Assembly: GCA_026770705.1 (NCBI GenBank)
Contig: JANJGN010000007.1
Span: forward strand, 97,464,001-97,528,000
Direction: 5' to 3'
Source: Isurus oxyrinchus
Taxonomy: Eukaryota
Length of the DNA: 64,000 nucleotides
Below, in pieces: positions 5,713 through 64,000 of the stretch. Made by a program: the position numbers and the translations under genes. The first letter of the stretch is position 1; each line of letters begins with the position of its first letter. The notes below the pieces were generated by a model that did not search any database, had not been told where the DNA came from, and worked only from the letters and a program-made list of their open reading frames with translations.

Positions 5713-6043
5713 ATGTCTATATTCGATGTACTGAATTACCTCTTAGCGCTGGATTATTTACGCGGGTTAGATATCTGCACTTATCTGATAAATAGAAAGA
5801 GCAATTAGAACTGTGTAGGGATAATATCTCTTCAGCAATTATTGAAGATTATTTCATTTCCTTCCGTTATATTTCGCACATACTATTTCTTCACTTTTAA
5901 CCATCCCAATCATTTCCTCTGCCTGTAATCCTGCCTATGTTTATATCTATAAGCTACTGACGGGACCGCTCTCAGTGCTTCATATCCCGGGCCGTGTGAC
6001 TCCGGTGAAAGGTACAAACGTAAACATCATTTCCTGTGTGTCG
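5713..6043 (+). pseudogene. Copy 1a: frameshifted leader exon plus truncated 5' part of the V exon (5954-6043)
   Basis: ATGTCTATATTCGATGTACTGAATTACCTC aligns with the leader at 56630. 5954-6043 aligns with the first 30 codons of the V exon (RVTPVKGTNV), has a 2-nt deletion, and then jumps back into promoter sequence. Confidence 0.85.
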
Positions 6044-6303
6044 GAAATATTCACATGACGCGAAATTATCTCATGTTCTCTGGAACAACAATGAGATGTG
6101 ATTGGTTTCAACTTCCATTGCGTGTTCTCACCTTTGACGTAAAAATGAAACCAGTAAACCGAAGCTGGAGTTTCAACTGTAGCAATGGTGGACCATATTG
6201 CAGCACGCCCAATGCCCAATCTTCAATTTTTTCCATTCTCCTACCCTTCAGTTTTTCCAGCTGATTTGTAGCACGAATGACCAGTTAATCGGCTTTGAGC
6301 AGA

Positions 6304-6790
6304 ATGTATATATTCTGTGTTGAATTATCTCTCAGCGCTGGCATTATTTACACAGGTGTCTATATTAGACCTGTTCGATAAATGTTTACTGTTGATTGTA
6401 CATTTTCATTTTTTCGTTGTATTTCCTTCCTTTGAATCTTGCCGATCATTACCCTTACGGCAACCCTGTGTGTTTATTTCTGATATTTACTGACGGGAGC
6501 GCGCTCTCACTGATTCAGGTCCCTGATCGTGTGACTCAGGTGGAAGTTACAAATGTGTCCATCAATTTCTCAGGGTCGCTTTTGTTTCTCAACGCAATGC
6601 TGGATCTTTATTGGTGGCGAGAGGGCCAATACGCGACTTTGGATACGGCTGCAGACATAAGGAAAACAGTGATGTCTTCCAAACAAGGGTCTTACAAGTT
6701 CCACCTGCTGAATGTGAGTTCCTTATTGCAGCGTTCCAGAAGGGGCAGGAATGATTTTCAATGGTGGCGGGGCTAACCTAATGATACAAG
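6304..6790 (+). pseudogene. Copy 1b: leader exon (6304-6355) and VJ exon (6488-6790) pseudogene
   Basis: Leader MYIFCVELSLSAGIIYT with ACAG|GT donor. The V acceptor AG is mutated to AT, the first Cys is Phe, and a deletion removes the DSG motif and shifts frame; the donor AAG|GTGAGT is retained. Confidence 0.9.
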
Positions 6791-19320: not shown

Positions 19321-20477
19321 GTAAATTTAACACCAGTCTATATCAAGACAGAATATTCTGGAGGAACACAAGGATTCAGATAGTATCTGTGGAAGTGAAA
19401 GCCGAACCTAGATCTGGAAAATAACTCCCTTTCTTTTCTCCAAGGATAAAATCTGCCCTTTTGAGTACTGACAGTAGTTTATATTTTTATTTCACATTTT
19501 CAGCATTTGCGGGGAGTTTACTTTTGCTTATGACACGTGGTGTTCTGGTGTAAAATGGATACCATCGCAGCCATCAGTAGAACTGGATGTCACTTTTCCA
19601 TTGATGACCAGTCCATTCATTTTGTTCGAATATTGAGTATTTTTCGGCAAATACATTGCAAAGGATGAAGTTGATCATTGGTGTAATTTCACTCAGGATA
19701 TGCCCGGCCAGTTCGAGGATCAGGTCAGTTTCAGTTTATTATACTGAGAAATAGGCTGTTATTTCAATGTACTGAACACTTACACCATAGATATACTGGT
19801 ATTCCTGGAACATGAGAAGTATCTCGCTATTGATGGCGCAAATGGCAAATCAATTCTCAGTTCATGGAATCCTCAATTACCTCCTCTAATGTGAAATATG
19901 GTCAGTGACCCGTCAGGACAACAATGATACCGGAGTCCAGGCAATACTCCTGATCCCGCAGATATGGTTGCTGATGTTTGGCTGTTGTCAGTGACGGTTG
20001 GGGGGCTATTCAGCCGCATGAAGGAACAAAGCTAACTCGATTCTGTGATCACATTTATCCCCACGTATGAACTTTTCAGCGTAATCCCTGAACATTGACC
20101 GCGGCTGCTCACTGACAGGGATAACGCCCCTTCCCTGGCCTCAGTGCCTCTGTGAAAATAGATATCTGCTGAAATAGTCAAATTCAGAACTCGGATTTAC
20201 ATTAACTACTGGGTGGCGCATGCGCGAGTTTTTGGCCCACTCAGTTAGGGCGAGTTCCTGATAACACAGATTGTGATTGAATGTTCAGAAATATGAAACC
20301 AATTAGTAAACGGTTGTCTCCGATGTCCTTGTAAGAATATTGTCACTGGGACAATGTCATTTTCAGGTTTGATCTGCAGTCATTAAACCCACCCAATGTG
20401 TTTATTTCCGGTTGTTGTTTTTGTCTTCTATTGGTAATATAAAATATTGCTAATATTTCTCAAAAGTCTCCCCACAG

Positions 20478-20678
20478 ACCATACACGGAGGAGAGGAGGG
20501 TAGTCCGAATTCCGCTGCTCTCACCTTCAGAGAGCAGAAGAAAACTGGGAAAGCCAGAGGTGAAGAAGAGAGCACAGTCTATGCACAGGTACGGCCGGCA
20601 AACGTAACAGTCCATTGTAAACTGGGACGCTCTGACGCAGCTCTGATCTCAGTAATGTGCAGTAACAGACTGAAATAA
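20478..20678 (+). pseudogene. Terminal cytoplasmic exon of copy 1 with ITSM-like TVYAQV
   Basis: CCCACAG acceptor; open frame TIHGGEEGSPNSAALTFREQKKTGKARGEEESTVYAQVRPANVTVHCKLGRSDAALISVMCSNRLK*; motif at 20574-20591. Confidence 0.7.
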
Positions 20679-23600
20679 TTAATCTGAGTAACAGGCGTCG
20701 CTGAAATGTTAATGTTGCTTCCACAGACCAATCACGAGACCAATAGTAAACTGATTTATGCGCCTTTGTATTTAACCGATTCACAGAATGGAGCAAGAAG
20801 GAAACAGCAGAAAAACGGAGTTGAGTACGCAGAACTCAAGATAAACAAACCAAGCCGAGAACCTGGCGTTGCATGAGCAGCAACAATGTCCAGAAATGTT
20901 GCAGTTACACGGGGGCCATTCTTCCTGTTGTCTCAATACTACAACTAACTGTATGTAGTGCGCTGTTCCTGAACAATATCGTTGAAGAGGGTATTCCCTC
21001 CAATCCTGCAACTATCACATAGGCCAGTTGAAGAGGAGAAAATACAATCCCTAACCACATAGCGACCAGAGATACTTAAACTTCCTTTACCGGTTTCTTT
21101 TCAAGTATATGCAAGGGAGCTGCAAGCATTCCTAAGAATGAAGACCCAGCTTCCTGACTGATTGTTTTTCATTACTTTTGTACTTTTTTCTTATCACAAT
21201 ACATTTGAGTACATTTGAATATATCCAATCGGTAACCTACACATAGGTACTACGTTAAAACTATTCAGTACATTTTGCGAATGAATAATTCTAAAGGGTG
21301 TATACATAGTTATATTATCCAATCAAAATTAAAACACGTACGCAAAGACCTTGGTTCTCACCACTCAAGACTGCTAGTGTTTCATCAAAGACCTCTCTTG
21401 TCTTATATGTCTTCTCATAGCTAAGCTAAACCATGTGTCCTGTTCTTATCTGAGAGAGTAGTACACCTAAACTAACTTCCTGTTATGTTTTAACTCCAGT
21501 CCAGTTCTCAAGACTTCACTGCATCGTTGCACCATTTGAATGGTTCTGCCTGTGTAAATCACACAAACTGAAAGCTCCTTTGTGTGCAATGTCCATCTAC
21601 TTACGTTCAGCTGTCAGTAGGTTTAACATCCATGGCTGCTTGGAGATTTGAAGTGCTCTTCAGCAAATTCTTACAGTGTTCTCTTTTAGCATTTTTAATT
21701 TCCCCTAACAATCGTAATTAACTGAATTGGATGGAAGGAGCAGGAGATGTAATTGCAGCAAGAAACTGGCATCAGGACCTGCGCCTATTCGTGAAAGTTT
21801 CAATTCAGGAAAAATCAATGGAAACGATGCATTACTTATCATCGTCTTCACATGGGAAAGAAGGGAATTGAGGACCCTTGTCTAGCCCGATTGGAGACGA
21901 CATGACTGTTTAGCTGGTTCAATTTGACACATTGTACTCCATGGCAGACTTATATAGTATTTACAACAGAGAAGCACACCACTCGTCTCAACAGCTCTAT
22001 GCCAAGGCCTCAAAAAATCTATACGAATTTATTTCAAAGCTTCTTCAACAACCCACAATGACTATCCACCCGTTTATTTCTACCTCCTTTATTTCTCTAA
22101 CTTCCACTTAAATGTATTGTTAGTGGTGTCAATACTCACTATGCTCGTGAATTGCACATTCTAAACATAAAGCGTTTCCTCGGAATTGGATTAGCGACTA
22201 ATTTATGTTTATGATTTCTAGTTCTATCATTGCCCACATTTGTGTCATGCCTAACCTGTTAATCCCTTTTATAGGCTAAAAGCTACCATCAGATTATGGC
22301 TTCTATTAAAATCATAACAAATATGAACAGGGGTAGACTATTGAAGAAGATCCTCGATGATGTTTCAAACTAAAATAATAAATTTCCAAAAATAGTGTTA
22401 CCTCTGTGAAATCATATTCATTGTTTCCAAAAGCTCAGTTACCACTTTCTCAATAAGTGATTCTGGCATTTCCCTAAAACGAATGGCAGGCTAACTGATC
22501 CATCGTGTATTTTATCCGCTCTCACATCCATCATTCAACCCACCCCATAAATGCCCCACTTTGGCAGAACTGCACCCCATCCCCCCACACACATAGACAC
22601 ACACACACACACACACCTCCACACAACGCCTACCCCGCCCTCACCACTCTACCTTTCCAAATTGTGCGGTTACGTTTGTACATTCGTGACCTTCAGGTCC
22701 ATGTACTGGGAAGTAAAAACCAAAGCGGCCGTGATCTCTGCAGCTAACACTTCAGAAACGATAGGATACAAATCCACTATTCCAGGAGCTGTATTCACTT
22801 CCAGGGTCATTTATAAAGATCCCAGCGTGTCTGTCATTTGTTCTCTAACATATTTAAATGTGTAAGAGCGTATTTCAGCCTCACTAAGTTCTTTCAGTTT
22901 ATTAGTTTTCTATCATCTTCCAATCTTGAATATTTCTCTTTTGTCTGATACGTTCTTCCAATGTCACAAATCACTATATAAGCACTTCTAACCAGCAATG
23001 AAGTAAGTTAATTATTTAATTACCCGCTCTTTGCTGTCAGCAGTGATGTAAGTAATGATGAAGATCATTACTGGATTTGAAGAAAATGTCCCACAAAAAT
23101 ATAATGATGTCCATGGCAGGTATTGTATTTCTCGATGTTTGTGTGAATTTGGCAGCAACGTCACTAGACGTCCAGTAACAATGAGGTTATCAAGCAAAGT
23201 AGAAGCATCCAATCACATAGAAGTATTCTCACAGACAGCAAGCAAGTCATTAGACTGCACTGAATATCCTTCATTATTTAACATCATCGCACAGACTGTA
23301 TCAATGGAAAATGTAAGGTCGAATCTGAAAAAGTAGAAAGAAACTTTAGAAAAAGAAAATTGTGACCAACTATTGCCTGCCAATGGTGAAACAAGAGTGC
23401 TTGACATTGAGCCAAAGGTAAGCTGCTGTAGAGATACAGAAATCTCTGTGGCATGGTTTCACTAATCTGAATGGGCTTTAAGTCTGGTGCTGAGACAGAA
23501 GATAATGTCGTATGTCACAACCTGACGTTAGCAAGCAGGCAAATATCCAATGATATTTAGTTACTCACACATCTTCAGCTAGAAAGTTAACAGCAATTGA

Positions 23601-30475: not shown

Positions 30476-31115
30476 AACAAAAATTAAAATCCGTTCTTCC
30501 AAGGAAATAACAAAAACTGACGAACCTTCGAGAACCATGCAATCTAATTAGGACTGAGATCGAATTCAAACATTTCTATATTTTTGGTACCCTAAGTGTC
30601 CTGCAATTTCACCGCTTCATATCTGCTCAAGGTCTGACGGATTGTCTTAGGTTAGTTTTCAGGGATCTCGATAGCAAAGGACACACTGATAGCCAAAACC
30701 ATGCTTACATTCGTCTGGCTGTGTTTGCACTGAACAACCCCAACAGCCTGGGCTCAAGATACAGGGAATAGAACCAAACGGTATTCACGGCGCCTGCAGG
30801 CAAGTACTTGCAAACGTTTCCTCACATTTTAAATTATTTAAGAGTTGCATCAATACGGAAACATTCACACCGTTCAAAAATGTTCCATGTTCACTTGGGA
30901 AACATTGAGATGCGGGTGGTGTCAACTCCCAGTGAATGTTCTCACCGCTCACGTTGAGGTGAAACCTGAACATTGATGTTGTAGCTTCAGCTCTCTTGCC
31001 CTGCGCCAGAATGCAGCACGTCGAACCTCTGGTTATCTTTAAATCTTTCCATTTTCGCACACTTCAGTTTTCCCCACTGACTTGCAACTCGAGTGACCGA
31101 TGTCATCGCCATAGG

Positions 31116-31623
31116 ATGCCTATATTCGATGTGTTGAGTTACCTCTCATCACTGACATTATTTGCACAGGTGTGTTTACTTATACCTGCTTGACAAATTA
31201 GGGAAGGGAATTTCCCTTCAATATCTAACGTCGTTTCTTCCCTTGGAATTCTGCCAATCATTACCTCTGCACTTAATTCTTGTTTGTCTTTATCTCTGAC
31301 AGTTAGTGACGGGAGCACGCTCTCACTGCTTCAGGACCCAGACCGTGTGACTCTGGTGAAAGGTACAAATCTGTCAATCAATCGCTCTGTTTGACTTTTT
31401 GTTCCCGACGCAATGCTGGATGTTTCTTCATGGAGAGAGGGCCATGACACAACTCCGGATCCGACGACAGACACAAGGAAATAAATGATGCCTTCCAAAC
31501 AAGGATCTTCCCAGTTACACCTGCAGAATGTGAGTTTCCAAGACTCCGGAGCCTATTATTGCAGCGTTAAAGAAGGGGCAGGAATGATTTCCATTGGCGG
31601 CGGGACTGATCTTAGTGCGCATG
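31116..31623 (+). pseudogene. Copy 2: leader exon (31116-31169) and VJ exon (31303-31623) pseudogene
   Basis: The leader is 54 nt (1 nt short, wrong phase). The V exon is full length (321 nt) with intact splice sites and QDSGAYYCSVKEGAGMISIGGGTDLSAH, but the first Cys is Arg and there are two in-frame stops (TGA, TAA). Confidence 0.93.
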
Positions 31624-35915: not shown

Positions 35916-36134
35916 AAGCAAGAAAAAATAGGTAGGGTTCATTGTGTACATTATCTAAAGGGTCACAGTGAATTCCATGAGGATAAAGGCAAAACAAAAA
36001 GCATTAGGGTGTATAGCAGTGATAAGCCACTAAAAGAGTGTTCTAATGACCTTGCTCTTGCTCAGCTTCCATCTATAACACAGTGTGCAGTTCGGCTCCT
36101 GCATGTGACCAGAGGGAATGAGTAACATTTCATA

Positions 36135-36712: not shown

Positions 36713-39107
36713 TTGGCCAGTTGATGGGGGTGTGGGGGTTGGGGGGGTGGGTGGGGGGCGGGTGGAGGAGGTACTCAATAGGTTGATCACTAGTTATCAT
36801 GATTTGCACTCTAGAAAAAGATAGACTTCACGGGGAAGTAAATTAATCAGAAAGCCTGTTTACATGTGGAGAAAATATTTGAATTGAATGCATTGACAGA
36901 GGAGGGCGCAGGAAGACCAGCCATGTAAGTGCTGGACTACTTCAGCTGTTTGGTGAATTGTCTTCTGCCATAATTTCAATAGTCTCGGGAATAAGATTAA
37001 GGCCAGTGTAGTGAGTGCAGATTCTCTACACATGTTTAAAATGATCTGTCCAAGTCCCCAGAAGTGATATATGTCATAGTGATCATACGGCACGGAACGA
37101 GACCATTTGGCTCATCGAGTCAGTGCCAGCTGTTTCATAGAGATATCCAGTTAGTCCCAGTCATCCGTTTTCCCCATACCCTTGTAATGATCAAGCTTTT
37201 CTCCAAACCTATTTTGAATATTACTATTGAAGATGCTTATATAGCGACTTCAGGCAATCCATTCCTGATCACATCAACACACTATTTATGAAATTTTCTC
37301 CCCATGTGCCCTCTCATATTCTGCAAATCGCCCTCATTCTTTATTTTTGGTTAACCGTACTGGGCCGTTTCTTATTTACCCTATCAAGCTGATCAGAGTT
37401 ATAAACATCTCCATCAAACCTCTATCAAACTTCTCTGCACCATAAAGAACGGCCCGAGCTTATCCTGTCTCTCCACATAATGGAAGTACCATGGTCCTGG
37501 TAATATTCTAGCAAATCTCCTCTATACACCCTGAAAGACTTTGAAATCCTTCCGAAAGTGTTGTGTTCAGATTTTGACACAATTCTTTAGGTGAAAACTA
37601 ATGAGTGTTTTATAAAGTTGAACAAAACTGCTTTCATTTTGATTTCTATTCCAATATTAACAAAGCCGAGCATAACTATTTTGTAAACTCAACTTAGCCT
37701 GCCACCATGAAATATTTGTATACTTATATCCTCATGGCATTCTGTTCCAGCAACCCATTTACATTCCATAATTTAGTCATGCTACCCCACCCCAGCACCC
37801 ATAGCCCCACGCCCCACTCCACCTCAACACCTCCATGTTCTTCTAATCAAAACGCACCATTACATATCTATCTGCATTAAATTTAATTAATACTGAACCT
37901 ACTCAATCTGCCATCATGTATGTAGCCGTCTGCATTTTGCCACTACCCTGTTGATTGTTTACCATATTTCTGGGCTTTTTAATAACCTGATAATGTTGAC
38001 AGTATGCCCGAAATATGCAATTCCACATCATTAAGTGCTATCGAAAAGAGTTTTCCTAATAAAAGCGTGGAAAAACAACACTCGATGCACCACCACCCCA
38101 CATTCCCCCAGCGCCCACCCCCACACCCCCACCACCACCCCCCCCCCCCCCCCCCACCACCCCCACTTCCCCCCCACCCCCACCACTCCAAAAAAATCAA
38201 CTGCTTCTCACTAAACTTTGATTGTCGTCCTTTGGTCTATTGCTGACTGTTCCTTTAATCCAGATAGCCTTAAGTTAGTTAATAACTTTAATATGCAGAA
38301 CTTTGGCAACGGCCTTTTGAAAATCCAAACCAACCATCGGTCATCTCAGGTAATTTTGCAAAAAACACCATCAAATTTGCCGAACCCCCTTTTGCCTTCA
38401 ACAATCAGTATTAACTTTCATTTGACTAGAAAATACGATTCCCATAGGCCAACTTTCCCTGGGTTACGATATTTAAAGTTTTTCACCCCACTTTAGGATA
38501 ACTTGGCCATGGTTGTTCGTATTAACATTTCTATTCATGGAGCAAAGGTGCAACATTTTTATTCCCCTGACACTGCTCAGAAATCCAATACCGCTTTTAG
38601 GGCCAGACGAAACCGAGCAGATCCCTCAGCATAATATCACTCAGCACGAAAAGCAGATGGGGGACTCCGTAATGTATTGAATGGTTAAGTTCATCCACTG
38701 GGACGAGATTCTTAAACTCTCAGAGAAACTTTCCTTTAATGCATTTTATCAATAAAACAAGATTTATTTTTAGTCAATTTGTGTGCTTTGGGGGCACAGA
38801 GTGAGACAAACAAATGCATCCATACGCATCCGCAAGAAAGTTGTACAAACATTAAGTAAAATGCGATATATAACCTGAATAAAGTGTTGATGTTATCATA
38901 AATAGTTACTGTATGCGTCGACCTGTGTTGCACTTTGGTTGTTTAATACTACTACTATAGGGCTCAAGGCAAATGAAAAATGGGATGTTCCTTGGTCCCT
39001 CCATCAGAGAGGATGATTTTGATATGTCAGTTAAATGACGTTTCTTAATTATTTAGCATCATCTGCTCTTTAAAATGCTCACATTCCACTTTCCCTGTCC
39101 CTTTTAG

Positions 39108-39223
39108 GTCGTACTTTCCCCTATCGCTGGTGTCTGGTTCTGCAGCGGGCGGATTAATGATTTCAGTAATGATGCTGTTGCTGGCAGTTCTTGTCAAGCG
39201 ATGCAAAATGGATAGACCTGATG
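39108..39223 (+). pseudogene. Transmembrane exon of copy 2
   Basis: CCCTTTTAG acceptor; encodes YFPLSLVSGSAAGGLMISVMMLLLAVLVKRCKMDRPD. The 5' end is frameshifted and the donor is removed by a 10-nt deletion between GATGG repeats relative to copy 1. Confidence 0.75.
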
Positions 39224-39893
39224 GCACGGTCCTGATTTAAAACTGGGTGTTACCGTCTAGACACAGTGAAATGCTATGGCAGGAGGCCGGGAGCTTATAT
39301 GGTGCAGCCTTCATCTCGATTTCGAGACCAGCGTCTATCGCACAGGGAGAGTTTGTCGGTTTTGTCCCAGTGAGGTGATGAGGGTAAGGACTCAACTCGA
39401 GAGGCAGATCAGAATAAGCTCACCAGCAACGACCATTAAATTTGACTGTGTTTCTGTTCTTGGCGATTACTCAAGGTGATGGTGTGAACTCCATGTGTTA
39501 AATGCCGCTAAGGTTGGACTGTACAGGGAGGAGCAGCAAACTTGGGGCAGAAAACCTGAACCAGGAGTATAAATTTAATGCGTGATATCTAAAGACAGAA
39601 AATGTTGTAAATGTTCACCAGTACATATGGAGATAAAATCAGCATTGATGCTTTATGCGTATGACCTTTGGTCAGAACCGGGACTTGGAAAAATAACTCT
39701 GCTTTTCAGCATCGGTTGTGTTTTATTTTTATGTAAAACCGTAAAATGGACACCATCTCGTCCACCTGTAGAACCATATGGTAATTTTCTACTGATGATG
39801 AGTCTGGTCACGTTGCTCGAAAGTTGGGTAATTTTTGGCGGACACTTCGCACATGATTAAATTGATTCTTGATGTAATTTATTTCTCCGAAAG

Positions 39894-39937
39894 GCAGGGC
39901 GATTCCAGAGCTCATGACCAACCAGTTCGAGCAGCAG
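39894..39937 (+). pseudogene. Candidate 44-nt cytoplasmic mini-exon (phase 1 to 0), copy 2
   Basis: Reads GRAIPELMTNQFEQQ. The paralog at 19697-19723 ends CAG|GTCAGT. It would bridge the phase-1 TM exon to the phase-0 terminal exon. Confidence 0.3.
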
Positions 39938-40668
39938 TCAGTTTCAGGTTAATTTAATGAAAAATAGGCTGTTATTTCACTGTCCTGAACACTCACAGCA
40001 TAGTTATACTGGTTGTCCTGGGGCGTCAGAAATGCTCCTGCTCATATTGGAGCACACAGCAAAAAAATCTGAGTTCATGGTATCCTCAATATCCTCCGTA
40101 ATGTGAAGTATGCTCAGAGGCCCATCAGCACAACAATGATACCCGAATCCAGGCAACCCTCCAGCTCTCGCAGACACCGGCATTCTTGTTTCCGTTTAGT
40201 CAGTGCCGGTTAGGCGCCTACTCAACCATATTCAGCTCAATTCTGTGATCACCCGATACCCCCACCCATGAACTACTGAGCGGCATCTGCATGTTGACTG
40301 GGGCTGCTCACTGAGTGATACCGCTCCTGTCCAGGCCCCAAAGCCCCCGAAAAAAGTTAACTTCTAAAATAATCAAACTCCGAACTTGTTTGTGCGTTAA
40401 ATGTTGAGTAGCGCATGCGCCAGTTCTTGGCCTAATTGCTGATAACACAAATGATGACTGCATCTTCAGATAAATGAAGCCAATTGCGAATGAGATGTCT
40501 GCGATGTACTTGTAAGACTATTATCACAGGGACATTACCAACTACAGGCCTGACCTGCAGTAATTAAACTCAGCCAAAATGTTTATTTTTCGTTGCTTTG
40601 GTTCCCCTCTATCTTCGTTTGCTGATTTAATATATAGCAGCTAATATTTCTCCAAACTATCTCCACAG

Positions 40669-40821
40669 AGCAAGCATGGAGGAGAAGCGGGGAGTCCGAC
40701 TTCCCCTGCTCACCTTCAGAGAGCAGAGCAAAACAGAGATACCAAGGCGAGAGAAAAAAACACCTCCTATGCCCAGGTTCGGCCGATAAACAGAAGTCTA
40801 TTCCAAACAGGCCCGCTCTGA
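40669..40821 (+). pseudogene. Terminal cytoplasmic exon of copy 2 with ITSM-like TSYAQV
   Basis: CTCCACAG acceptor; SKHGGEAGSPTSPAHLQRAEQNRDTKAREKNTSYAQVRPINRSLFQTGPL*; motif at 40762-40779. Confidence 0.7.
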
Positions 40822-41168
40822 CACAACGTCTGATCTCAGTAATGTGCATTGACAGACTGAAATAATTAATGTGAGCAAAAGGTGCGAATTGTCCTTGTTT
40901 CTACAGACCAAGCACGGGACAAATGGTAAGCTAACTTATGGGTTTTTGGATTTCACCGATTTCCAGAATGGGCAAGGAGGAAACAGGGGAAAAGCGGAGT
41001 GGAGCATGCAGAGAACGATATAAGTAAACCAAACGGATAGACCCGGGTTCCCTGAGCATCACCAAAGTCCAGCACTGTTACAGTTACACCGGGGCTACTT
41101 TGTTGTAACCTGAATTCTACACTAACCGTGTATAATACACCGGCAATACATTGTGCTGTACTTGATTG

Positions 41169-50048: not shown

Positions 50049-51160
50049 ATCAAAGGTTATTTGCAGAAATAAAAGCTCATGGCATGGGGTTAACACATTG
50101 ACATGGACAGTAGATCATCGGCTAGCTAACAGGAATTAGAGTAGGTATAACTGAGCCTTTATCAGATTGGAAAGATATTTGTCACAGGGATCATTGCTAG
50201 CACCTCAACTGTTTACAATTTATATTAATGACTTGGATGAAGGGATGGATGGGATGGCTTCCAAATTTGCTGATGATACAAAGATAGGTAGGAAAGTAAG
50301 TTGTGAACAAGACATAAGGAGGCTACAAAAAGATAAGGAATGGTTAAGTGAGTGGGCAGAGATCTGACCATTCGACTATGATGTGAGAACATGTGGAATT
50401 GTCAATTTTGTCAGGGAGAATAAAAGAGAAGCATATTATCCAAATGGTGAGAGATTGCAGAGCTCTAAGATGCAGAGGATTCTGAGTGTCCCCGTGCATG
50501 AATCGCAAAAGTCTAGGACGCAGGTACAGCAAGCAATGAGGGAAGCTAATAAAATGTTATATAAAGCAAGAAGATTTGAATACAAAAGTAGGATGTTCTG
50601 CTTCAGTTAAACAGAGCACAGGTGAGACCACATTTGGAATACTGTGCACAGCATTGGTCGCCTTATTTAAGAAAGGATGTAAACGTTTTGGAAGCAGCTC
50701 CGAGTTTTACCATAATAATGGGCGGGTTGCCTTGTGAGGAAATGCATCCGCTGGAGTTTGGAAAAGGAAGAGGCGACTTGATTGAAACGTGTAAGATCCT
50801 GAGGGCTCTTGAGAGGATGGATGTGGAGAGGATGTTTCCTATTGTGATATAATCTAGAACCATGGGTCATTCTTTCAAAATAACGGGTCACCAATTTAAA
50901 ATGGAGATGAGGTGAAACGTTTTTTTGTTCTCCCAGAGTCGTGAGTCTTTGGAATTCTCTTCCTGAAAAGGTGTTGGAAGCTTGATCTTTTTTTAAGGCA
51001 GATGTGGATAGATTCTTGGTAAGTAGGGGGTAATAAATGATCGTGGTAGGCAGGAAGCAGACTTCAGGTGACTATCAGATCAACCATGATCTTATTAAGT
51101 GGCGAAGAAGGCTAGAACAGCCAAATGGCTTACCCCTACTCCTCGTTCGTATATTCGTTC
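50049..51160 (+). mobile_element. CR1 LINE RT 3' half
   Basis: SQGSLLAPQLFTIYINDL...SKFADDTKIG and RPHLEYCAQHWSPYL. Confidence 0.9.
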
Positions 51161-56005: not shown

Positions 56006-56465
56006 GGACATCAATTATAATTAGTTTTTTCAAGGAAATAACAAACGCTGACTAACTTTTGAGAACTGTGTAAGTTAATTAGGACTGAGATTGAATTCAA
56101 TAATTTCAATTTTTTGGATTCCTTAAGGTCTATCAATTTCACCGCTCCATATCTGCTAAATGTCTGGCGGATTTTTTTCAGTTCGGGTCCTAATAGCAAA
56201 GGACACACTATAAACCGCACCATGCTGACAATCGTCCGGCCGTTTTTCCACAAGCAATCCCAGCAGTCTGACCTCACGATTCAGGGGATAAAACCAGACA
56301 GTATTCACCGCGCCTGCAGGAACGTATTTGTGAACATTGAGTCATACTTTAATGTGGTTAAGGGCTGCGTCAATACGGAAACTCGCACGTGGTTCAAAAT
56401 GTTCCATGTTCTCTTGGCAAATAATGAGTTGTGGGTGATTTCAACTGTCACTGTGTTCTCACCTC

Positions 56466-56473
56466 TGACGTTA
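56466..56473 (+). promoter_or_regulatory. CRE/ATF-like motif TGACGTTA in the putative promoter of the intact copy
   Basis: Positionally conserved in copies 1a and 1b; altered (TCACGTTG) in copy 2. Confidence 0.35.
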
Positions 56474-56629
56474 AAGGGAAACCAACATATTAATGTCGCT
56501 TCGGCTATCTTGTGTTGCGCCACATTATAACACTTCCTACTCCTGGTGAACTTCAAATCTTTCGATTCTTATACCCTTCAGTGTTGCCCGCTGACTTGCA
56601 CCACGGCTGACTGATTTCAGCGCCACACA

Positions 56630-56684
56630 ATGCCCCTATTCCATGTGTTAAATTACCTCTCAGCACTGGGCGTTATTTACACAG
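56630..56684 (+). CDS. Copy 3 exon 1: signal peptide (MPLFHVLNYLSALGVIYT)
   Basis: ATG, hydrophobic peptide and phase-1 donor ACAG|GT; splices in frame to the V exon; homologous leaders at 5713, 6304 and 31116. Confidence 0.85.
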
Positions 56685-56863
56685 GTGTCTATTTTCATGA
56701 TTGTTTGCTAAATAGGGAAGAGAATAAGATTAGAAGGCAATTCTCTCCAATGTTTATTGCAGTCTACATTTTATTTCGGTATATTTCATGCATATAATTT
56801 CCCCTTGAATCCTGCCAATCATTGTCTCTTCTGATAATTCCTGTTTCTGTTTATTTCTGACAG

Positions 56864-57184
56864 TTACTGACGGGAACGCGCTCTCAGTGTTTCAGACCCC
56901 CGACCGTGTGACTCCGGTGAAAGGTACAAATGTGTCCATGACTTGCTCTGCGTCGCTTTTCGATCTCAAGGCAATGGTGGAAATTTATTGGTGGACTGAC
57001 CGCCAAGGAGCGGCTTTGGATCCGGCAGCAGACAAACGGAAAATAATAATGTCTTCCAAACAAGGAACTTCCCAGTTGCACCTGCTGGATGTGACTTTCC
57101 AAGACTCCGGAGTCTATTACTGCAGCGTTAAAGAAGGGGCAGGAAAGCTGTCCAGTGGCGATGGGACTGAGATTATTGTACACG
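56864..57184 (+). CDS. Copy 3 exon 2: Ig V-set domain with germline-joined J-like segment
   Basis: Acceptor TTTCTGACAG, donor G|GTGAGT, phase 1-1, open. VSMTC...IYWW...LHLLDVTFQDSGVYYC...SGDGTEIIVH has the canonical Cys, Trp, DxGxYxC and GxGT motifs. Confidence 0.95.
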
Positions 57185-60100
57185 GTGAGTATTAAAGAAT
57201 ATGGTACCGAAGAACTGGAAAGAATTTTCTCACAGGTCTAATTTATGTTATGATTATCCCACATTTGCAGTGAATTCTGTTTGTTTACAAAGAGCATTGA
57301 CCGGGCTGCGCAAACTAGAATGTCAGCATTCAGCTCATCATTGCTCTCCATGGGGTATCTGTCATGAAGATTTTTAATACCCGTTATTTGCATTAATCAA
57401 TTTTCTGAATAAGAGCCGCGTTGGCACGGGCATCAATCAAGTAATCATGTATTGTCCCTATTTATGCTTGAGAAGGTGACCCCCGTGCTTTTTCCTTTAA
57501 CGGCTGCAGCCGATGCTTTGAAGTCATGATACCTTGATATCGTGTTCAAAGTTCCATGTTCTTGATCCCGTGACAAGTGATGGACGGTGATATATGACCA
57601 AGTCAGCATGATGCCTGCCTTGGTGGGAAGATGGAGCCCTGTTCGTCTCATGCGGCTGCCGCTCTTGTCATTTTAGATGATGCAGCTCACGGACTTGACA
57701 TGAAATGTAGTACAATCTTTGGAAAGTGGTGTTATGCATTTTGTAGATGGCACAGACTGCAACACCAAGACGCAGATGATGAAGACATTGGTTGTTTAAA
57801 GTGGTGAGTTGACTGACGTCGAGCATTCGTGCAACTGCTCTCACCCGAACAAGTGTAGAGTTTGCCATCAGAATCCTGCCTGGCAAGATGCGGAGATACT
57901 TTGGGGAGTCAATGGTGCACAATGTCCAGCCGCTAAGCTGTCCCAGTAACCTTGACACTTATATACAATGGTTACAAACACTTTAACCATGTTTGTATAT
58001 TTAATGCATTTGTCAACATTTATTGAATAAAGACAAAGTGAATTTGTCTCCAAATAGATTCCTTTTGAAATCACTTCATTCAATCTTCTTATCACGGAAG
58101 CAGCCCGCATGCAGCGTTCCCCCCACACACAGCCCACCACCCGCCCCCTCAACCCACCCCCCCCCCCCCCCCCCCACCACGTCCCGCCATTGTCCTTTGA
58201 ATAAAAGCTGGGGTACAACAATGAAATTGGAAGTAATTATCAGAAAATATGCGCAAGAATAAGAAACAGATTAAGGGGCACAGGGATACTGGCGGTTAAA
58301 GGCGATCACAAGGGAGAGTATTAACAGGATAATTTCTAAATAGTATTTTGCTGCATAATTAATGAATCAATGAGCACCTTTTACTGACAGCAGATATAGT
58401 TTATGCTCAGAGATGTTAGTTTATCAATGATAATTTATTTGCTTCCATAGCCCGATGCATTTGCAAGATTAAATTTTGTATTAAGTGCAATCAAATTGCA
58501 TTTAGCTCTGTATATATATTTTGCAGTGAGGACGCCGCATGCATTGAATATTCTCCGAACGTTTACAGGAGATTATAATTGGATTTATCATAATTTACAG
58601 TTGATGGATATATTTACAGTGACAGAGATGATTGCAATTTTAGATTAATTAAAACATGCGACAAACTTTAGATATCAACAGCTGTGAAGTGTTTTTTTTT
58701 AAACCACTTGGATGGAGAACATTTCCATAAAACAGAACTCAGCCTCAGACTGTGTAACCCGTGTGCGGAATGTCTCCTTTTTCAACGATATCTGAGACTC
58801 CAGCAGGACAGCGGTGATGAAACCGAAATAATCTCCATAGGTCCCCGTGCCAGGGAGCAAGACATGTTTCAAATAAGGAACGGATCTCATGGAGATGTCA
58901 TTGGGAGAAGGCCATGGATAGAAAGTAATCTAACACCGGACTGTAATCATGTTCAGGCTGCGTGACGAAAACATGGTGTTTAGCGTATCTAACAATGAAA
59001 GAGTCGCTGACCGGGGTACAGTTGGAGGTAATACTGGAACCTGGTAAGGTATTTGGGAAAATTTAAGCATAAAATTCGTTGGAACCAAGGTAAAATATTC
59101 CTGATACAGCAGGTAGCGGCCGCTGAGCTTAAAGTTTTCACAGACCAACATGAGGGCGATGTGAATGTGAGATGCGCTCCTTTCATGGAGGTCCATTCCT
59201 GAAAGTAAAAATAATATAAGTTGTAAATAGGGTTGTTTAGATTGAGAAGTGGAATAGTGTGGTTAGCACAGGATGGAGGTAAAGTCAATAACTACGCCTA
59301 GTTCCAAACTGATCAGATGGAGATTGGAGTGATGGCGAAAGAAAGTCAACAATTATCCCAAGAAAGTGAAGAATAAACACTGGGATTGGGGGATCTTGGG
59401 TCATAACGTGTTTATAGTCCAACTTCCCTGCATATTTGAGGAATTTTCGATGAAGGCTTGTTGCCGGTGATTGAGCCTAGGTAATTATTCCCCTCAACAT
59501 GCTTCATTGACTCGATTCTCAAACCGCAGAATGTCGGTTACAGTGTAAACGCGCTAGAACTTGAACTCCTGAACCCAGTGACCTGAGAGGGGATGCGATG
59601 CTTTTAAAGTGAGATTAGGGGAACGGATTTGCTCCCCTGCATAAAGAGTTGTCAATGCTGAAAATAGAGAGATTGGGTCTTTTACATGGGTCTTTCACAA
59701 CTATTGCCCCCTGTGAGATAATGGATGAGCCTGGCGGTATAATGACCCTCACAGAGGCACTGGACTCCACGTCATGACATTTTGGGTACCATAGTAATAT
59801 GAGACAGTACAAAATGCAATTACTTGCTGACATTAGGCCTGTAGCCTGGGCATCAAAGCGAGTTAAAGGCAGGCCCAGTAGAAGGGATTGAAAAGTGTTC
59901 CCACAGTGGATAACGGCGCATAAATTGACGGTGATTTACAGAAACAGAAAGGAAATGTTAAAAGACATTATTCTGATGAATAGATTATGGGAACGAGACA
60001 CAGATTAGCACAACGACCATTAGATTACATCAGACGGAGGGGCCATGAGTGAACTAATTTCATACTTGCAGGCAAATATTAAAGAATGCGGGGAAAGGAT

Positions 60101-60652
60101 ACCGGGCTGACTGCGGTTGAGCATTAGCAGTGCGGCTTGTAACGTGCTTATCCGCTGGGGACTTCATAACCGGAAAGGATCACAAGGGGCACTGAGGCAG
60201 TCAGATTAGGCGACACTCAGGCCCAAAGCGGTCATAGATGAGACACTCAATGAGATTTCGCTCTGCATCAGCAAGATATTCGCCCTGAAATGGGTCTCGG
60301 GAATTTAATTCATTCTTGAGGAATCAGGCACGGATCTCAGTAAAGGCACAATGTTGGGATGACGAGGTTTATTGATATTTGTTTGTCCTGTCTAACATTG
60401 TATTCTGAATATCTGAACTGTAGCGAAACACCTGCAGTGAGGGTTGAGACACCATACTGGTGGGTTCATGATTTTATTTCAGTATCACAGATATCAGGCC
60501 TTCCCTCGCCATGCTGGCTGAAGACATGATTAAAAACACATTGCATTTGCTGTTTCAAATATTCTCCCTCCTAGGCAGCCATTCTGTCATATGTGTTTCG
60601 AATGTAGAGCACGAATAACAATTTTAACTCATTCCCTTTAACTCATTCACAG

Positions 60653-60934
60653 TGCCTCCAACACCTGTGAAGATTATCCTCCTGTCCTCTCCGTCCCTCA
60701 CACTCCTCTGCATAACAGTTGGCTTCTTCCCAGGAGAGTTTAACCTCAGTTGGTACAAAGATGAAAACGAAATTACGTCGGTAGCAAACACAACGAAAAG
60801 AGAGAACGAGGAGGGATTATATCAAGTTTCCAGCTCCCTTAACCCCGTGGAGAGTTGGGCGGTTTATACCTGTCAGGTTTCTCATGTCTCCCTCGGGGCC
60901 CCAGTCAATGACAGCTACACAGTTCGGGATGCAG
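60653..60934 (+). CDS. Copy 3 exon 3: Ig C1-set domain
   Basis: Acceptor TTCACAG, donor CAG|GTAAGG, phase 1-1, open. TLLCITVGFFP...LSWYKD...GLYQVSSSL...YTCQVSH are C1-set hallmarks (CxxxGFxP, YxCxVxH). Confidence 0.95.
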
Positions 60935-60984
60935 GTAAGGATCCTCAATTACTCTTGTGAATTGTCCCTTGTTAATTTTATTTT

Positions 60985-63955
60985 CATTCATTCACGGGGG
61001 TGTGAGCATCGCTGGCTGGCTCAGCATTTATTGCTCATCCTTAGCTGCCCTTCAGAAGGTGGTGGTGAGCTCCCTTCTTGAACCTCTGCAAGCCCTGTGG
61101 TGTCGGTACACTCACAATTCTGATAGGGAGGGTGTTCCAGGGTTTTAACCAAGCAACAGTGAAGGAACGGCGATATATTTCCAAGTCAGGATGATGAGTG
61201 ACTTGGAGGGGAGCTTCCAGGTGGTGATGTTCCCATTTATTTGCCTCCCGTGTCCTTCTAGATGCTAGTGAACGTGGGTTTGGAAGTTGCTGTCTTAGGA
61301 GCCTTGAAAATTTCTTGTAGTTAGCCTTGTAGATGGTACACACTGCTGCTACTGTGCGTCAGTGGTGGAGGGAGTGAATGTTTGAGGAGTTGGTACCAAT
61401 GAAGTGGTCTGCTTTGTCCTGGACGGTGTCAAGCTTCTTCAGCGTTGTCTTGATAGTGTGTGATTCAGTGATGGTAATGCCAATGAACATCAAGGGGGGT
61501 GGGGGGCGTTGGATTCTCTCCCGTTGGAGATGATCATTGCCTGACACTTGTGTGGCACGAATGTTATTTGCCACATGCCAGCCCAAGCATGGGTAATGTC
61601 CAGGTCTTGCTGCATTTGGGCATGGACTGCTTTAGCATCTGAAGAGTCGTCAATGGTGCTGACCATTGTGCAATCATCAGTGAACACCCCCACTTCTAAC
61701 CTTATGATAGAAGGAAGGTCATTGATGAAGCAGCTGAAGATGATTGGGTATAGCACATTCTCCTGAGAAATTCCTCCAGTGATGTCCTGGAGCTACTATG
61801 ACTGACCTCCATCAACCACAACAATTTTCCATTGTGCTCGGTATGACTCCAACCAACGGAGAGTTTTCCCCCTGATTTCCATTGGCTCCAGTTTTGCTCG
61901 GGCTCCTTGATGCCACACTCACCCAAGTGCAGGCTTGATGTCAAGGGTAGTCACTCTCACCTCGTCTCGGGATATTAGCTCGTTTGTCCATGTTTGAAAC
62001 AAGGCTGTAACGAGTTCAGAGGCTGAGTAGCCCTGGCAGAACTTAAACTGGACATGAGTGAGCAGGTTATTGCTAAGCAAGTGCCACTTGGCAGTGTTGA
62101 TGACCCCTTCCATTACTTTGCTGATGATCGAGAGTAGCCTGGTGGGGTGGTAATTGGCCGGGTTGTATTTGTCCTGTGTTTTGTGTACAGCACATGCCTG
62201 GGCAATTTTCCACTTAGCCGGATAGATGCCTGTGTTGTAGCTGCACTGGGACAGCTTGACTAGGGGTGCACCAAGTTCTGTAGCACAAGTCTTCAGTTCT
62301 ATTGCCGGAATGTTGTTAGTGCCCATAGCCTTGCAATATCCATTCTTTTAGCCGTTTCTTGATATCATGTAGAGTGAATCGAACTGGCTGAAGAATGGCA
62401 CCTGTGATACTGGGGACCACCTGGGACACTGGCATCATCCACTCAGTGCTTCTGGCTGAAGAATGTTGCAAATGCTTCAGCCTTATTTTTTGCACTGCTG
62501 TGCTCGGCTCCTCCATCATTGAGGATGGGGATATTTGTGGAGCTTCCTCCTCCAGTGAGTTTTCTAATTGTCCACCACCATTCACCACTGAATTTGGCAG
62601 GACTGCAGAGCTTAGATCTGATCCATTGGCATTGGGATCGCTTAGTTCTGTCTATCACTTGCTGCTTATGCTGTTTGGCACGCAAGTAGTCCTGCTTTAT
62701 AGCTTCACCAGGTTGTCTCCTCATTTTTAGATATGCCAGGTGCTGCTCCTGCAATCTTCATTGAACCAGGGTAGATCCCATGGCATGATGACAATGGTAG
62801 ACTGGGGGATATGCCGGGCCATGAGGTTACAGATCGTTCTCGAGAGCAATTATTCTGCTACTGATGACCCACAGTGCCTCAAGGATGCCCAGCCTTGAGT
62901 TGCTAGATATATTCGAAATCTACACCATTTAGCACGGTGGTAGTGCTAAACAACACGATGGAGGGTATCCTCAATGTGAAGGCGGGACTTCATATCCAAA
63001 ATGACTGTGCAGTGGTTACTCCTACTAATACTGTCATGGACAGATGCATCTGTGGCAGGCAGGTTGGCGAGGATGAAGTCAGGTATGTTTTTTCCCCCTT
63101 GTTGGTTTCCTCACCACCTGCTGCGGAACCAGTCTAGCAGCTATGCCCTTTAGGACACGGCCAGCTCGGAAAATAGTGGTGCTACTGAGCTAATCTTGGT
63201 GATGGACATTGAAGTTTCTTCATCCAGAGAACATTCTGTGCCCTTGCCTCCCTCAGTTCTTCCTCCAAATGATGTTCAAAATGCAGGAGCATGGATTCAA
63301 CAACTGACGGAGAGCAGTACCTGGTAATCAGCCGGAGATTTCCTTGCTCATGAGGCTTCATTGGGTCCAGAGTCGATGTTGAGGACTCCCGGGGCAACTC
63401 CCTCCTGCCTGTATACCAATGTGCCACCACCTCTACTGGGCCTGTCCTGCCAGTGGCACAGGATATGCCCAGGGATGGTGATGTTTGGAAAATCATCTGT
63501 GAGATATGATTCTGTGAGGACGACTATGTCAGGCTGTTGCATGACTAGCCTGTGAGACCACTCTTCCACTTTTGGCATTAGCCACAGATGCTAGTAAGGA
63601 GGACCGGTCTGCAATTGTGTTGTGGTTTCCGGTGCCTAGGTCAATGCTGGGTGGTCCGTCTGGTTTCATTCCTTTTCTGTGTCTTTGTCGCGGTTTTTTA
63701 CAACTGAGTGGCTTGCTAGGCCATTTCAGAGGGCAGTTAAGAGTCAGTTACATTGCTGTGGGTCTGGAGTGACATGTAGGCCAGATCAGGTAAAGACAAC
63801 AGATTTCCTTCCCTAAAGGAAATTGGTGAATCAGAACGATTTTTACAACAATCAACTATGGTTTCCTGGTCATCATTGGACTTGTAATTCCAGTTTTTTT
63901 TTTCCTTCAATTCAAATTGCTAACCCAATGACATTACCACTACACCATCGCCTCC
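60985..63955 (-). mobile_element. Decayed CR1/L2-group LINE (APE + RT) with a SINE-like 5' head (63705-63955)
   Basis: PDIVVLTESYL...QDRPSRGGG (endonuclease), NPANYHPTRLLSIISKVME and FINDL...FTDDCT (RT), and a (TGAA)n tail. The 5' 250 nt align with the SINE at 35581. Confidence 0.88.
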
Positions 63956-64000
63956 CATCAAGGGCCTGATAGGGGCTTTCAATCTCCCCTCATCGGCAAC

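What the first reader, a model, noticed from the sequence alone, without database searches (positions are those of the whole stretch)
56630..60934. Intact non-rearranging antigen-receptor-like gene: leader + germline-joined VJ + C1
Seen: three open, phase-matched GT-AG exons encode a signal peptide, a V domain whose G strand (SGDGTEIIV, GxGT) lies in the same exon, and a true C1-set domain. I saw no heptamer/nonamer RSS in or next to the V exon. Established: C1-set domains are largely confined to Ig, TCR, MHC/B2M, tapasin, SIRP and some B7 members, and an unsplit VJ exon joined to C1 is the architecture predicted for the pre-RAG ancestor of antigen receptors. NKp30, SIRP, PRARP and shark UrIg are the relevant comparators. 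Inference: this belongs to a poorly characterised or undescribed cartilaginous-fish VJ-C1 receptor family.
Basis: partly seen in the sequence, partly recalled or inferred. Interest (0 to 1): 0.9.

Follow-up and report, generated by a model that had tools for sequence, protein, structure and literature searches.

The report
Shark non-rearranging VJ-C1 receptor gene
These are the first three exons of an apparently intact cartilaginous-fish gene for a cell-surface immune receptor with a ready-joined antibody-like variable domain and a true C1 constant domain. It belongs to a large family found in sharks, rays and chimaeras that sits in databases under contradictory automatic names, and I could find no paper describing it.

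Summary
Exons 56630-56684 (split leader), 56864-57184 (V domain with its J-like G strand in the same exon) and 60653-60934 (C1-set) are open, all phase 1, and have canonical GT-AG sites. There is no RSS at the V exon.

The gene is not an Ig/TCR, UrIg or UrIg2 gene. Both exons place it, at 52-68% identity, in one subfamily of a multigene family. The family is present in sharks, rays and chimaera only as automatic NCBI models named "SIRP-alpha-like", "tapasin-related-like", "NCR3LG1-like" or "Ig lambda-like". Full-length members are leader-VJ-C1-TM plus a tail with up to four conserved tyrosine motifs. Others have short tails and an Arg in the TM. This is the layout of a paired inhibitory/activating receptor, closest in working to SIRP.

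The window gene's TM and tail exons lie beyond base 64000. Two decayed copies lie upstream in the window.

I found no RNA evidence (only DNA contigs) and no paper in the library I could search. First readers of this scan noted similar clusters on at least seven other pieces of this genome, and also 992 kb before the window's start and 32 kb beyond its end on this piece.

Whether the family is orthologous to SIRP, or an independent VJ-C1 lineage, is unresolved.

The parts
56330..56629 (+). Upstream/promoter block, conserved among the three tandem units
   Evidence: about 80% mean column identity between 56330-56700, 30816-31186 and 6000-6370. Function as a promoter is inferred, not shown.
56630..56684 (+). 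Exon 1: split leader (MPLFHVLNYLSALGVIYT plus 1 base), phase 1 donor
   Evidence: Matches the leaders of homologues (e.g. P0167 at 78% over 18 aa).
56685..56863 (+). Intron 1 (179 bp, GT..AG)
56864..57184 (+). Exon 2: end of the leader plus a V/I-type Ig domain with a J-like G strand (GDGTEIIV) in the same exon; no RSS
   Evidence: 52-58% identity to family members.
57185..60652 (+). Intron 2 (3468 bp) with a high-copy repeat at about 58127-58283
   Evidence: depth around 1e5 in DNA contigs.
60653..60934 (+). Exon 3: C1-set Ig domain (VPPTP...LLC...WYKD...YTCQVSH), phase 1 at both ends
   Evidence: 60-68% identity to family members.
60935..64000 (+). Start of intron 3: a SINE at about 60953-61100 and LINE/RT debris on the minus strand. 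There is no TM or tail exon here, so the gene continues beyond the window.
31116..31623 (+). Unit 2: decayed leader and VJ exon (1-base deletion in the leader, two in-frame stops, first Cys lost)
39106..41037 (+). Unit 2: TM exon (39106-39213) and decayed tail exon (40895-41037; the last Tyr is now His). No C1 exon detected.
6308..6790 (+). Unit 1: leader and decayed VJ exon (first Cys lost, frameshift near 6718)
20475..20873 (+). Unit 1: two cytoplasmic-tail exons (20475-20594 and 20724-20873) that keep STVYAQ, LIYAPL and VEYAEL. The first Tyr motif is lost.

Best explanation
The three exons are the 5' part of a germline-joined, non-rearranging member of a multigene family found across cartilaginous fishes. 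Family members are type I membrane receptors built as split leader, VJ domain, one C1-set domain, short stalk, TM and cytoplasmic tail.

Shown here:
- the exon structure, the domain types and the absence of an RSS;
- family membership of both exons in the same subfamily;
- the family's presence in sharks, rays and chimaera;
- two tail types in the family: a long tail with up to four alternating tyrosine motifs (xxYAxL, TVYAQT, LTYAxL, xEYAEI), and a short tail with an Arg in the TM.

Inferred: the V domain binds an unknown ligand. In long-tailed members the phosphorylated ITIM-like tyrosines recruit SH2 phosphatases and dampen the cell. Short-tailed members pair with an ITAM adaptor through the TM Arg. 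This is a paired inhibitory/activating receptor system that works like SIRP-alpha/SIRP-beta.

The window gene is most probably a long-tailed (inhibitory) copy, with its TM and tail exons about 4-6 kb past the window's end. It is the one surviving copy in a tandem array of three, whose two upstream copies are pseudogenes.
For: Exons and domains. No RSS.

Family: the V exon hits chondrichthyan proteins of 230-450 aa at 1e-32 to 1e-8, and every one of the 30 looked up is of this family. Full-length and profile searches again find only chondrichthyans, then a gap from 227 to 37 bits. A C1-only search gives the same picture.

Trees: the V and C1 exons both fall in the same 12-row elasmobranch clade, SH-aLRT 99.

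Architecture and tail motifs. The motifs are conserved from Callorhinchus (MVYATL, TVYAQT, VTYAAL, TEYAEI) to sharks and rays. Short-tailed forms have TM ..FRLILG...IVDHLK.

Local support: the tail exons of the two neighbouring decayed units in this same window carry the same motifs.

SIRP-like features: the family profile aligns to SIRP-alpha V-C1 at 59 bits and to SIRP-alpha d3 alone at 46 bits, against 23-31 bits for the Ig CH and UrIg2 C domains scored on their own in that search (the Ig light-chain C domains were scored only together with V). It shares the SGxGTE(L/I)xV G strand and the VPPT start of the C1 domain. C1-less isoforms in other species (P0004, P0008, P0016) parallel the D1-only SIRP variants.

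Reading frames are kept in roughly 97%-identical DNA contigs of another individual or species, and all 10 listed indels are intronic.
Against: The window gene's own TM and tail are outside the window, so its signalling type is inferred from relatives, from neighbouring pseudogenes and from an unchecked first-reader note. Its subfamily also contains short-tailed members (P0017, P0165, P0168).

I could not obtain RNA evidence. The only runs holding the stretch are DNA.

ITIM/ITSM-like 'xxYAxL ... xxYAEV' tails are common in unrelated inhibitory receptors (e.g. the multi-V proteins P0116 and P0046). Tail likeness to SIRP may therefore be convergent.

SIRP has two C1 domains and this family has one. 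Structure searches do not single out SIRP. The V model's best Foldseek match is NKp30. The C1 model's best matches are MHC class II beta2 domains, with SIRP-gamma d3 tied within 0.5 Z.
Confidence: 0.7

Rival explanations
1. The family is the true chondrichthyan orthologue or co-orthologue of the SIRP family (SIRP-alpha/beta/gamma) and has lost, or never gained, one C1 domain. The gene would then be 'a shark SIRP', a known kind, and NCBI's name 'tyrosine-protein phosphatase non-receptor type substrate 1-like' would be right.
For:: SIRP-alpha d3 gives the highest score (46 bits) among the C domains that search scored on their own. The VJ G strand (SGAGTELSV against SGDGTEIIV) and the VPPT domain start are shared. 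The four-tyrosine tail and the paired long/short-tail forms fit. Many models are auto-named SIRP-alpha/beta/gamma-like. SIRP-gamma d3 is among the tied top C1 structural matches.
Against: There is one C1 domain rather than two. V-C1 scores against Ig kappa/lambda (61.6 and 65.1 bits) and UrIg2 (53.3 bits) are about the same as against SIRP-alpha (59.0 bits). No SIRP V domain appears in the top 60 PDB sequence hits or the top 50 Foldseek hits of the V exon. No bony-vertebrate SIRP appeared in any database search, but the two word-indexed searches are weak at that distance. Synteny was not testable.
Confidence: 0.25
2. This copy is non-functional or not a membrane receptor: a recently dead pseudogene like its two upstream neighbours, or a truncated or secreted form ending by read-through after the C1 exon (...RDAGKDPQLLL*).
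For: Two of the three tandem units in the window are decayed. No TM exon lies in the 3 kb after exon 3, which is filled with SINE/LINE. There is no RNA evidence. Some database models of the family lack a TM.
Against: All three exons are open, with every canonical residue and consensus splice sites. The frames are kept in divergent DNA contigs. In the neighbouring units the distance from V to tail is 9-14 kb, so the tail is expected beyond the window.
Confidence: 0.15
3. It is a member of the shark NCR3 (NKp30) family, or a B7-like gene, that has acquired or retained a C1 domain.
For: NKp30 structures (3noi, 6yjp, 3pv6) rank 1, 2 and 11 of the Foldseek hits of the V model, among a very large number of antibody and TCR chains (E 1.5e-9, TM 0.77). 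The G strand 'NGxGTxLxV' resembles the NKp30 G strand as I recall it. Some models are auto-named NCR3LG1-like or CD276-like.
Against: Identity to NKp30 is only 21-23%. NKp30 is absent from the top 60 PDB sequence hits. VIA-align ranks NCAM, IgNAR V, CD79b and TCR V equally (Z 13-15), so the fold match reflects a compact V/I-type domain. NKp30 has no C domain. Pfam prefers C1-set (53.5 bits) to the B7-type C2-set_2 (25.3 bits).
Confidence: 0.08
4. It is a secondarily germline-joined Ig light-chain or TCR cluster gene, or a UrIg/UrIg2 paralogue.
For: Sharks do have germline-joined Ig clusters (background knowledge). Split leader, VJ and C1 is the Ig/TCR/UrIg layout. Some models are auto-named 'Ig lambda-1 light chain-like' or 'TCR beta chain-like'. 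UrIg2 is among the top PDB hits.
Against: None of the hits I named or read among the 150 best of the exhaustive V search is an Ig, TCR or UrIg V domain, whereas family members score 50-126 bits. The best PDB Ig/TCR V matches are 25-38 bits. UrIg2 C domains score 20-31 bits each. Family members carry a TM and a tyrosine-motif tail after a single C1 domain. UrIg has three C domains and is secreted, and UrIg2 has 9-11 C domains.
Confidence: 0.03

Closest known systems
SIRP family (SIRP-alpha/beta/gamma; PTPNS1/SHPS-1)
   Same: A non-rearranging V domain with a J-like G strand (SGxGTE(L/I)xV). True C1-set domain(s). Inhibitory long-tailed and short-tailed forms, the latter with a charged TM, which makes a paired-receptor system. 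Splice forms lacking the C domains. The best-scoring C domain among those scored singly is SIRP-alpha d3, 46 bits.
   Different: One C1 domain instead of two. Large tandem clusters with many divergent subfamilies. The V domain is compact (V/I-type, no C'' strand). No sequence-level clustering with SIRP was demonstrated, and the ligand is unknown.
UrIg and UrIg2 (elasmobranch non-rearranging Ig-like genes; Flajnik et al. 2023, 2025)
   Same: Cartilaginous-fish genes with a canonical split leader, a single-exon VJ and C1-type domains. UrIg2 is among the best PDB matches.
   Different: UrIg has three C domains and is secreted. UrIg2 has 9-11 C domains. This family has one C1 domain, a TM and a tyrosine-motif tail. 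It is also present in chimaera, is highly multigenic, and shows only generic similarity (20-31 bits per C domain).
NKp30 / NCR3
   Same: A germline VJ-type, compact Ig domain. It is the best Foldseek match of the V model.
   Different: NKp30 has no C1 domain, has a short tail and signals through a TM Arg. Identity is only about 22%.
Ig light chains and TCR chains
   Same: The leader-V(J)-C1 exon plan with phase-1 introns. V-C1 profile scores are similar to those for SIRP.
   Different: No RSS and no separate J. There is a TM plus a signalling tail of its own. It is not among the closest V relatives.
[quoted passage not shown] 2019) and lamprey TCR-like / agnathan APAR
   Same: Non-rearranging VJ domain, TM and ITIM-type tail. 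This rests on my recollection and on the citation.
   Different: As I recall, PRARPs have a C2-type domain or none, and the agnathan genes lack C1. Here the domain is C1-set.

Membership tests
Unnamed chondrichthyan VJ-C1-TM receptor family (NCBI models such as XP_067905922, XP_038661939, XP_078399065) | V exon and C1 exon each cluster with the family | tested here: met
   V at 52-58% and C1 at 60-68% identity. Both exons fall in the same 12-row clade, SH-aLRT 99.
Unnamed chondrichthyan VJ-C1-TM receptor family | Stalk, TM and tyrosine-motif tail (or short tail with TM Arg) after the C1 exon | not testable with these tools
   Exon 3 ends in phase 1 at a consensus donor, and the rest lies beyond base 64000. 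The neighbouring units in the window have such exons.
SIRP family | N-terminal V-set domain with a J-like G strand, non-rearranging | tested here: met
   (SGDGTEIIV against SIRP-alpha SGAGTELSV).
SIRP family | [quoted passage not shown] | tested here: not met
   Full-length relatives have one C1 domain between V and TM. There is one C1 exon in the window.
SIRP family | Sequence or phylogenetic clustering with SIRPs, and shared synteny | tested here: inconclusive
   The profile scores against SIRP-alpha are 59 and 46 bits, similar to IgL V-C at 61.6 and 65.1 bits. No SIRP sequences could be brought in for a tree, and there was no flanking sequence.
SIRP family | ITIM tail recruiting SHP-1/2, or a basic TM residue pairing with DAP12 | not testable with these tools
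   Motifs are present in relatives. There is no biochemistry, and the window gene's tail is unseen.
UrIg / UrIg2 | VJ exon followed by three or more C1-type domains | tested here: not met
   Relatives have a single C1 domain followed by a TM, against UrIg with 3 and UrIg2 with 9-11 C domains.
UrIg / UrIg2 | V and C domains closest to UrIg/UrIg2 | tested here: not met
   UrIg2 C domains score 20-31 bits. None of the 30 closest V relatives looked up is UrIg.
Rearranging or germline-joined Ig light chain / TCR | RSS or its remnant, and V closest to IgL/TCR V families | tested here: not met
   No RSS. None of the hits I named or read among the top 150 of the exhaustive search is an Ig or TCR V domain.
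NKp30 / NCR3 | Single VJ-type domain, no C domain, TM Arg, short tail | tested here: not met
   A C1 exon is present. The fold match to NKp30 is the top Foldseek hit, but identity is about 22% and the hit is tied with many others.
PRARP | VJ domain, C2-type domain (or none), TM and ITIM; sequence clustering with PRARPA/B | not testable with these tools
   The paper is not held and no PRARP sequence was obtainable. The domain here is C1-set by Pfam and by fold.

The most novel reading that the evidence does not exclude
The chondrichthyan VJ-C1-TM family is an undescribed, ancient lineage, already diversified before sharks, rays and chimaeras split, of non-rearranging antigen-receptor-like genes. 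On this reading it is neither SIRP nor UrIg nor Ig/TCR. It combines an NKp30-like VJ domain with an MHC-class-II-beta2-like C1 domain in one chain, and so descends directly from the kind of proto-MHC VJ-C1 gene that the RAG transposon is thought to have split.
Probability: 0.3. Interest if true: 0.75.

Novelty: new variant of a known kind. Interest (0 to 1): 0.55.

Why it matters
Single-exon VJ domains joined to true C1 domains are the architecture sought as relics of the gene that RAG invaded. Recent work singles out UrIg and UrIg2 as the non-rearranging VJ-C1 genes retained in elasmobranchs.

This gene shows that cartilaginous fishes also carry a much larger, membrane-bound, self-signalling VJ-C1 family. 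The family is expanded in tandem clusters, undergoes birth and death of copies, and exists in databases only under contradictory automatic names.

If it proves independent of SIRP, it adds a third and far more numerous candidate lineage to the origin-of-antigen-receptor question. If it proves to be SIRP, it pushes the SIRP paired-receptor system back to the base of jawed vertebrates and suggests V-C1 as its older form. Either result can be tested directly with existing genomes.

Tried and rejected
- RNA evidence: the only runs holding the stretch are DNA contigs that run straight through the introns. Runs guessed to be RNA hold next to none of it. Expression is therefore untested, not absent.
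I obtained no exon maps or synteny for other species.
- Literature: ten searches found no description of the family. Fu 2019 (PRARP), Ohta 2019, Flajnik 2012 and Flajnik 2023 are not held. Prior description in a subscription paper cannot be excluded.
- Outgroups for a tree: the word-indexed searches with a full-length homologue, a family profile and the C1 region alone returned only family members plus three weak outsiders. A V/C1 phylogeny against SIRP, IgL, TCR, NCR3, UrIg and tapasin could not be built.
- Atlas searches gave only generic V-set clusters for the V exon and nothing for the tail.
- Homodimer test of a homologue's V-C1 ectodomain (P0151 residues 20-228, two copies): no verdict, score 0.00. 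This is no evidence either way, and I make no claim about dimerisation.
- RSS-like site at 35964: examined and set aside as chance beside a SINE.
- Joined protein: the spliced protein of the window gene was never assembled or searched. Each exon was searched by reference, and full-length inferences come from database homologues.
Full report
OBSERVATION. An ATG at 56630 opens an 18-codon leader exon that ends ACAG|GT at 56684/5. After a 179-bp intron with a pyrimidine tract and AG, exon 2 (56864-57184) is open throughout and ends CACG|GTGAGT. After a 3468-bp intron, exon 3 (60653-60934) starts behind CAG and ends GCAG|GTAAGG. All junctions are phase 1.

Pfam calls exon 2 V-set (8.4e-10, whole model) and exon 3 C1-set (3.2e-14, against 1.6e-5 for the B7-type C2-set). 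The V exon carries Cys27, Trp42, DSGVYYC and the G strand GDGTEIIV, so V and 'J' are one exon. A scan for heptamer-12/23-nonamer signals found none in or next to it.

AlphaFold models of each exon are confident (pLDDT 89.5 and 90.6). The C1 model matches classical C1-set domains: MHC II beta2/alpha2, IgNAR C3, SIRP-gamma d3 and UrIg2 C3, at Z 12.6-13.0 and rmsd about 2 Å over 87-90 residues. The Foldseek top 50 are all MHC II beta chains. The V model is a compact V/I-type domain without a C'' strand. Its best Foldseek hits are the NKp30 structures (E 1.5e-9, TM 0.77), just ahead of VHH, VNAR and TCR V domains. VIA-align ties NCAM Ig1, IgNAR V, CD79b and TCR V at Z 13-15.

The spliced protein of the window gene was not assembled or searched. 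Each exon was handled by reference.

WHAT ELSE IS IN THE WINDOW. The gene is the third of three tandem units on the plus strand, about 25 kb apart.

- Unit 1: leader at about 6308 and V at 6474-6790. It has lost the first Cys and is frameshifted, but keeps two tail exons (20475-20594 and 20724-20873) encoding ..STVYAQ....LIYAPL.. and ..VEYAEL...
- Unit 2: leader at 31116 and V to 31623. It has a 1-base deletion in the leader, two stops and no first Cys. It keeps a TM exon (39106-39213) and a decayed tail (40895-41037).
- Neither unit has a detectable C1 exon.

About 300 bp upstream of the leader is conserved among the three units.

After exon 3 of the finding, the window holds only a high-copy SINE (60953-61100) and LINE fragments. 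The distance from V to tail in the neighbouring units is 9-14 kb. The missing TM and tail exons are therefore expected beyond base 64000. An unchecked first-reader note places a four-site inhibitory tail 4.2-6.3 kb past the window's end.

WHAT FAMILY IT IS. I ran an exhaustive HMMER search with the V exon against 1.84 billion representatives. The top hits fall into two groups. One group is giant multi-Ig proteins, whose scores are summed over many domains. The other is about 40 proteins of 200-450 aa, each with a single V match at 1e-32 to 1e-8.

I looked up 30 of this second group. All are from cartilaginous fishes: Heterodontus, Scyliorhinus, Cetorhinus, Carcharodon, Mustelus, Heptranchias, Chiloscyllium, Mobula, Hemitrygon and Callorhinchus. 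None of the hits I named or read is an Ig, TCR or UrIg V domain; the giant multi-domain hits and the remaining single-V hits were not named.

Their names are automatic and contradictory: SIRP-alpha-like, tapasin-related-like, NCR3LG1-like, CD276 homolog, Ig lambda-like, MHC class I/II-like, TCR-beta-like or uncharacterized. Searches with a full-length homologue, with a 19-sequence profile and with the C1 region alone again gave only chondrichthyans, followed by a gap from 227 to 37 bits. Those three searches are word-indexed, however, and weak at long range.

In V-only and C1-only trees the window's exons fall in the same 12-row elasmobranch clade (SH-aLRT 99). At least four further subfamilies include chimaera sequences.

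ARCHITECTURE AND LIKELY WORKING. Full-length members read leader, VJ, C1, short stalk, TM and tail. Invariant or nearly invariant positions include Q..P, G.N(V/I)(S/T) just before the first Cys, YWW, DSGxYYC, NGxGTxLxV, VPPTP, FxP, WYxNG, GLY and YTCxVSH.

Long tails carry up to four alternating tyrosine motifs (xxYAxL, TVYAQT, LTYAxL, xEYAEI). These are conserved from Callorhinchus to sharks and rays. Several fit the ITIM consensus.

Other members have short tails and a TM with an Arg near the outer face and D/E-H near the inner face (P0017, P0024, P0025, P0165, P0168, P0177). Some isoforms skip the C1 exon (P0004, P0008, P0016).

This is the layout of a paired inhibitory/activating receptor family. 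The mechanism is inferred, not shown:
1. The V domain binds a ligand.
2. ITIM tyrosines are phosphorylated and recruit SH2 phosphatases.
3. Short-tailed members signal through an ITAM adaptor.

A homodimer test of a homologue's ectodomain gave no verdict.

COMPARISON WITH KNOWN FAMILIES. I searched the family profile against PDB sequences. V-C1 pairs score about equally: Ig lambda 65.1 bits, Ig kappa 61.6, SIRP-alpha 59.0 and UrIg2 53.3.

Among the C domains scored on their own, SIRP-alpha d3 scores highest at 46 bits, against 23-31 bits for Ig CH and UrIg2 C domains. SIRP-alpha also shares the SGxGTE(L/I)xV G strand and the VPPT start of the C domain.

SIRPs are V-C1-C1 paired receptors with ITIM tails and D1-only variants. 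SIRP is therefore the closest known system in how this family works.

Membership in SIRP is not established. A defining feature, two C1 domains, is not met. Structure searches do not single SIRP out. Similar ITIM/ITSM tails occur in unrelated receptors.

UrIg (three C domains, secreted) and UrIg2 (9-11 C domains) differ in architecture and show only generic similarity. A germline-joined IgL/TCR gene is effectively excluded. PRARP could not be compared.

NOVELTY. The proteins are in public databases, so the family is not unseen. I found no paper describing it in ten searches of the held library. The 2023 and 2025 shark papers on non-rearranging VJ-C1 genes do not mention it. Several key subscription papers were not readable, so prior description cannot be ruled out.

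First readers of this scan noted similar clusters on at least seven other pieces of this genome. On this piece they noted one cluster 992 kb before the window's start and another gene 32 kb beyond its end. These notes are unchecked. All MHC notes lie on other pieces.

LIMITS.
- I could not obtain RNA evidence. The runs that hold the stretch are DNA contigs, about 97% identical, contiguous through the introns, with all 10 listed indels intronic. Four of the five V-exon differences are non-synonymous.
- No tree with outgroups could be built.

VERDICT. This is a real, probably functional 5' part of a non-rearranging VJ-C1 receptor gene of a chondrichthyan-wide family that works like SIRP. Its orthology to SIRP and its relevance to the pre-RAG ancestor remain open.

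Noticed in passing
window 35964-36002 (+): Near-perfect RSS-like signal: CACAGTG, 23-bp spacer, ACAAAAAGC. It lies in the intron of decayed unit 2. There is no V-like coding sequence upstream in any frame, and it sits just after a tRNA-derived SINE. A rough estimate of the chance expectation is about 0.01-0.03 per window, so it is probably chance, but it is odd inside a VJ-C1 gene cluster.
   Followed up: partly
window 6308-6790, 20475-20873, 31116-31623 and 39106-41037 (+): Two decayed tandem copies of the same gene type lie upstream of the intact one. Both have lost the first V-domain Cys and have no detectable C1 exon, yet they keep recognisable TM and/or tail exons. This is birth-and-death turnover within the cluster.
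   Followed up: yes
window 5894-6052 (+): An extra fragment of the 5' half of a V exon (..LSVLHIPGRVTPVKGTNVNIISCVSEIF..) lies about 440 bp upstream of unit 1's V exon. It is a partial internal duplication.
   Followed up: no
window 56906, 56942, 57010, 57030, 57050: In the V exon, the roughly 97%-identical DNA contigs of 'organism A' differ at five sites. Four are non-synonymous (R>H, T>N, A>T, M>K) and one is synonymous. The overall divergence across the 4.7 kb is about 2.9%. This hints at diversifying change in the V domain, but the numbers are too small to test.
   Followed up: partly
window 58127-58283 and 60953-61100: Very high-copy repeats (summed contig depth 1e5-1e6 in four DNA runs) flank the C1 exon's intron. 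Many short contigs 'join' the two copies, which is a repeat artefact and not splicing.
   Followed up: partly
database proteins P0003 (XP_038661939) and P0024 (Heterodontus model): Annotation artefacts in the family. P0003 carries the stalk-TM-tail block twice. P0024 has a reverse-transcriptase fragment fused to its N-terminus, which produced spurious hits on LINE debris in the window (4564-4707, 45964-46104, 50251-50406, 61544-62125).
   Followed up: partly
database proteins P0116, P0046, P0076, P0092, P0075, P0145: A separate set of receptors has two or three tandem VJ-type domains, each ending NG(S/T)GTxVTI. These are followed by a TM and a VTYAxLxF...(V/I)IYAEV tail. They are another non-rearranging multi-VJ family worth identifying.
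   Followed up: no
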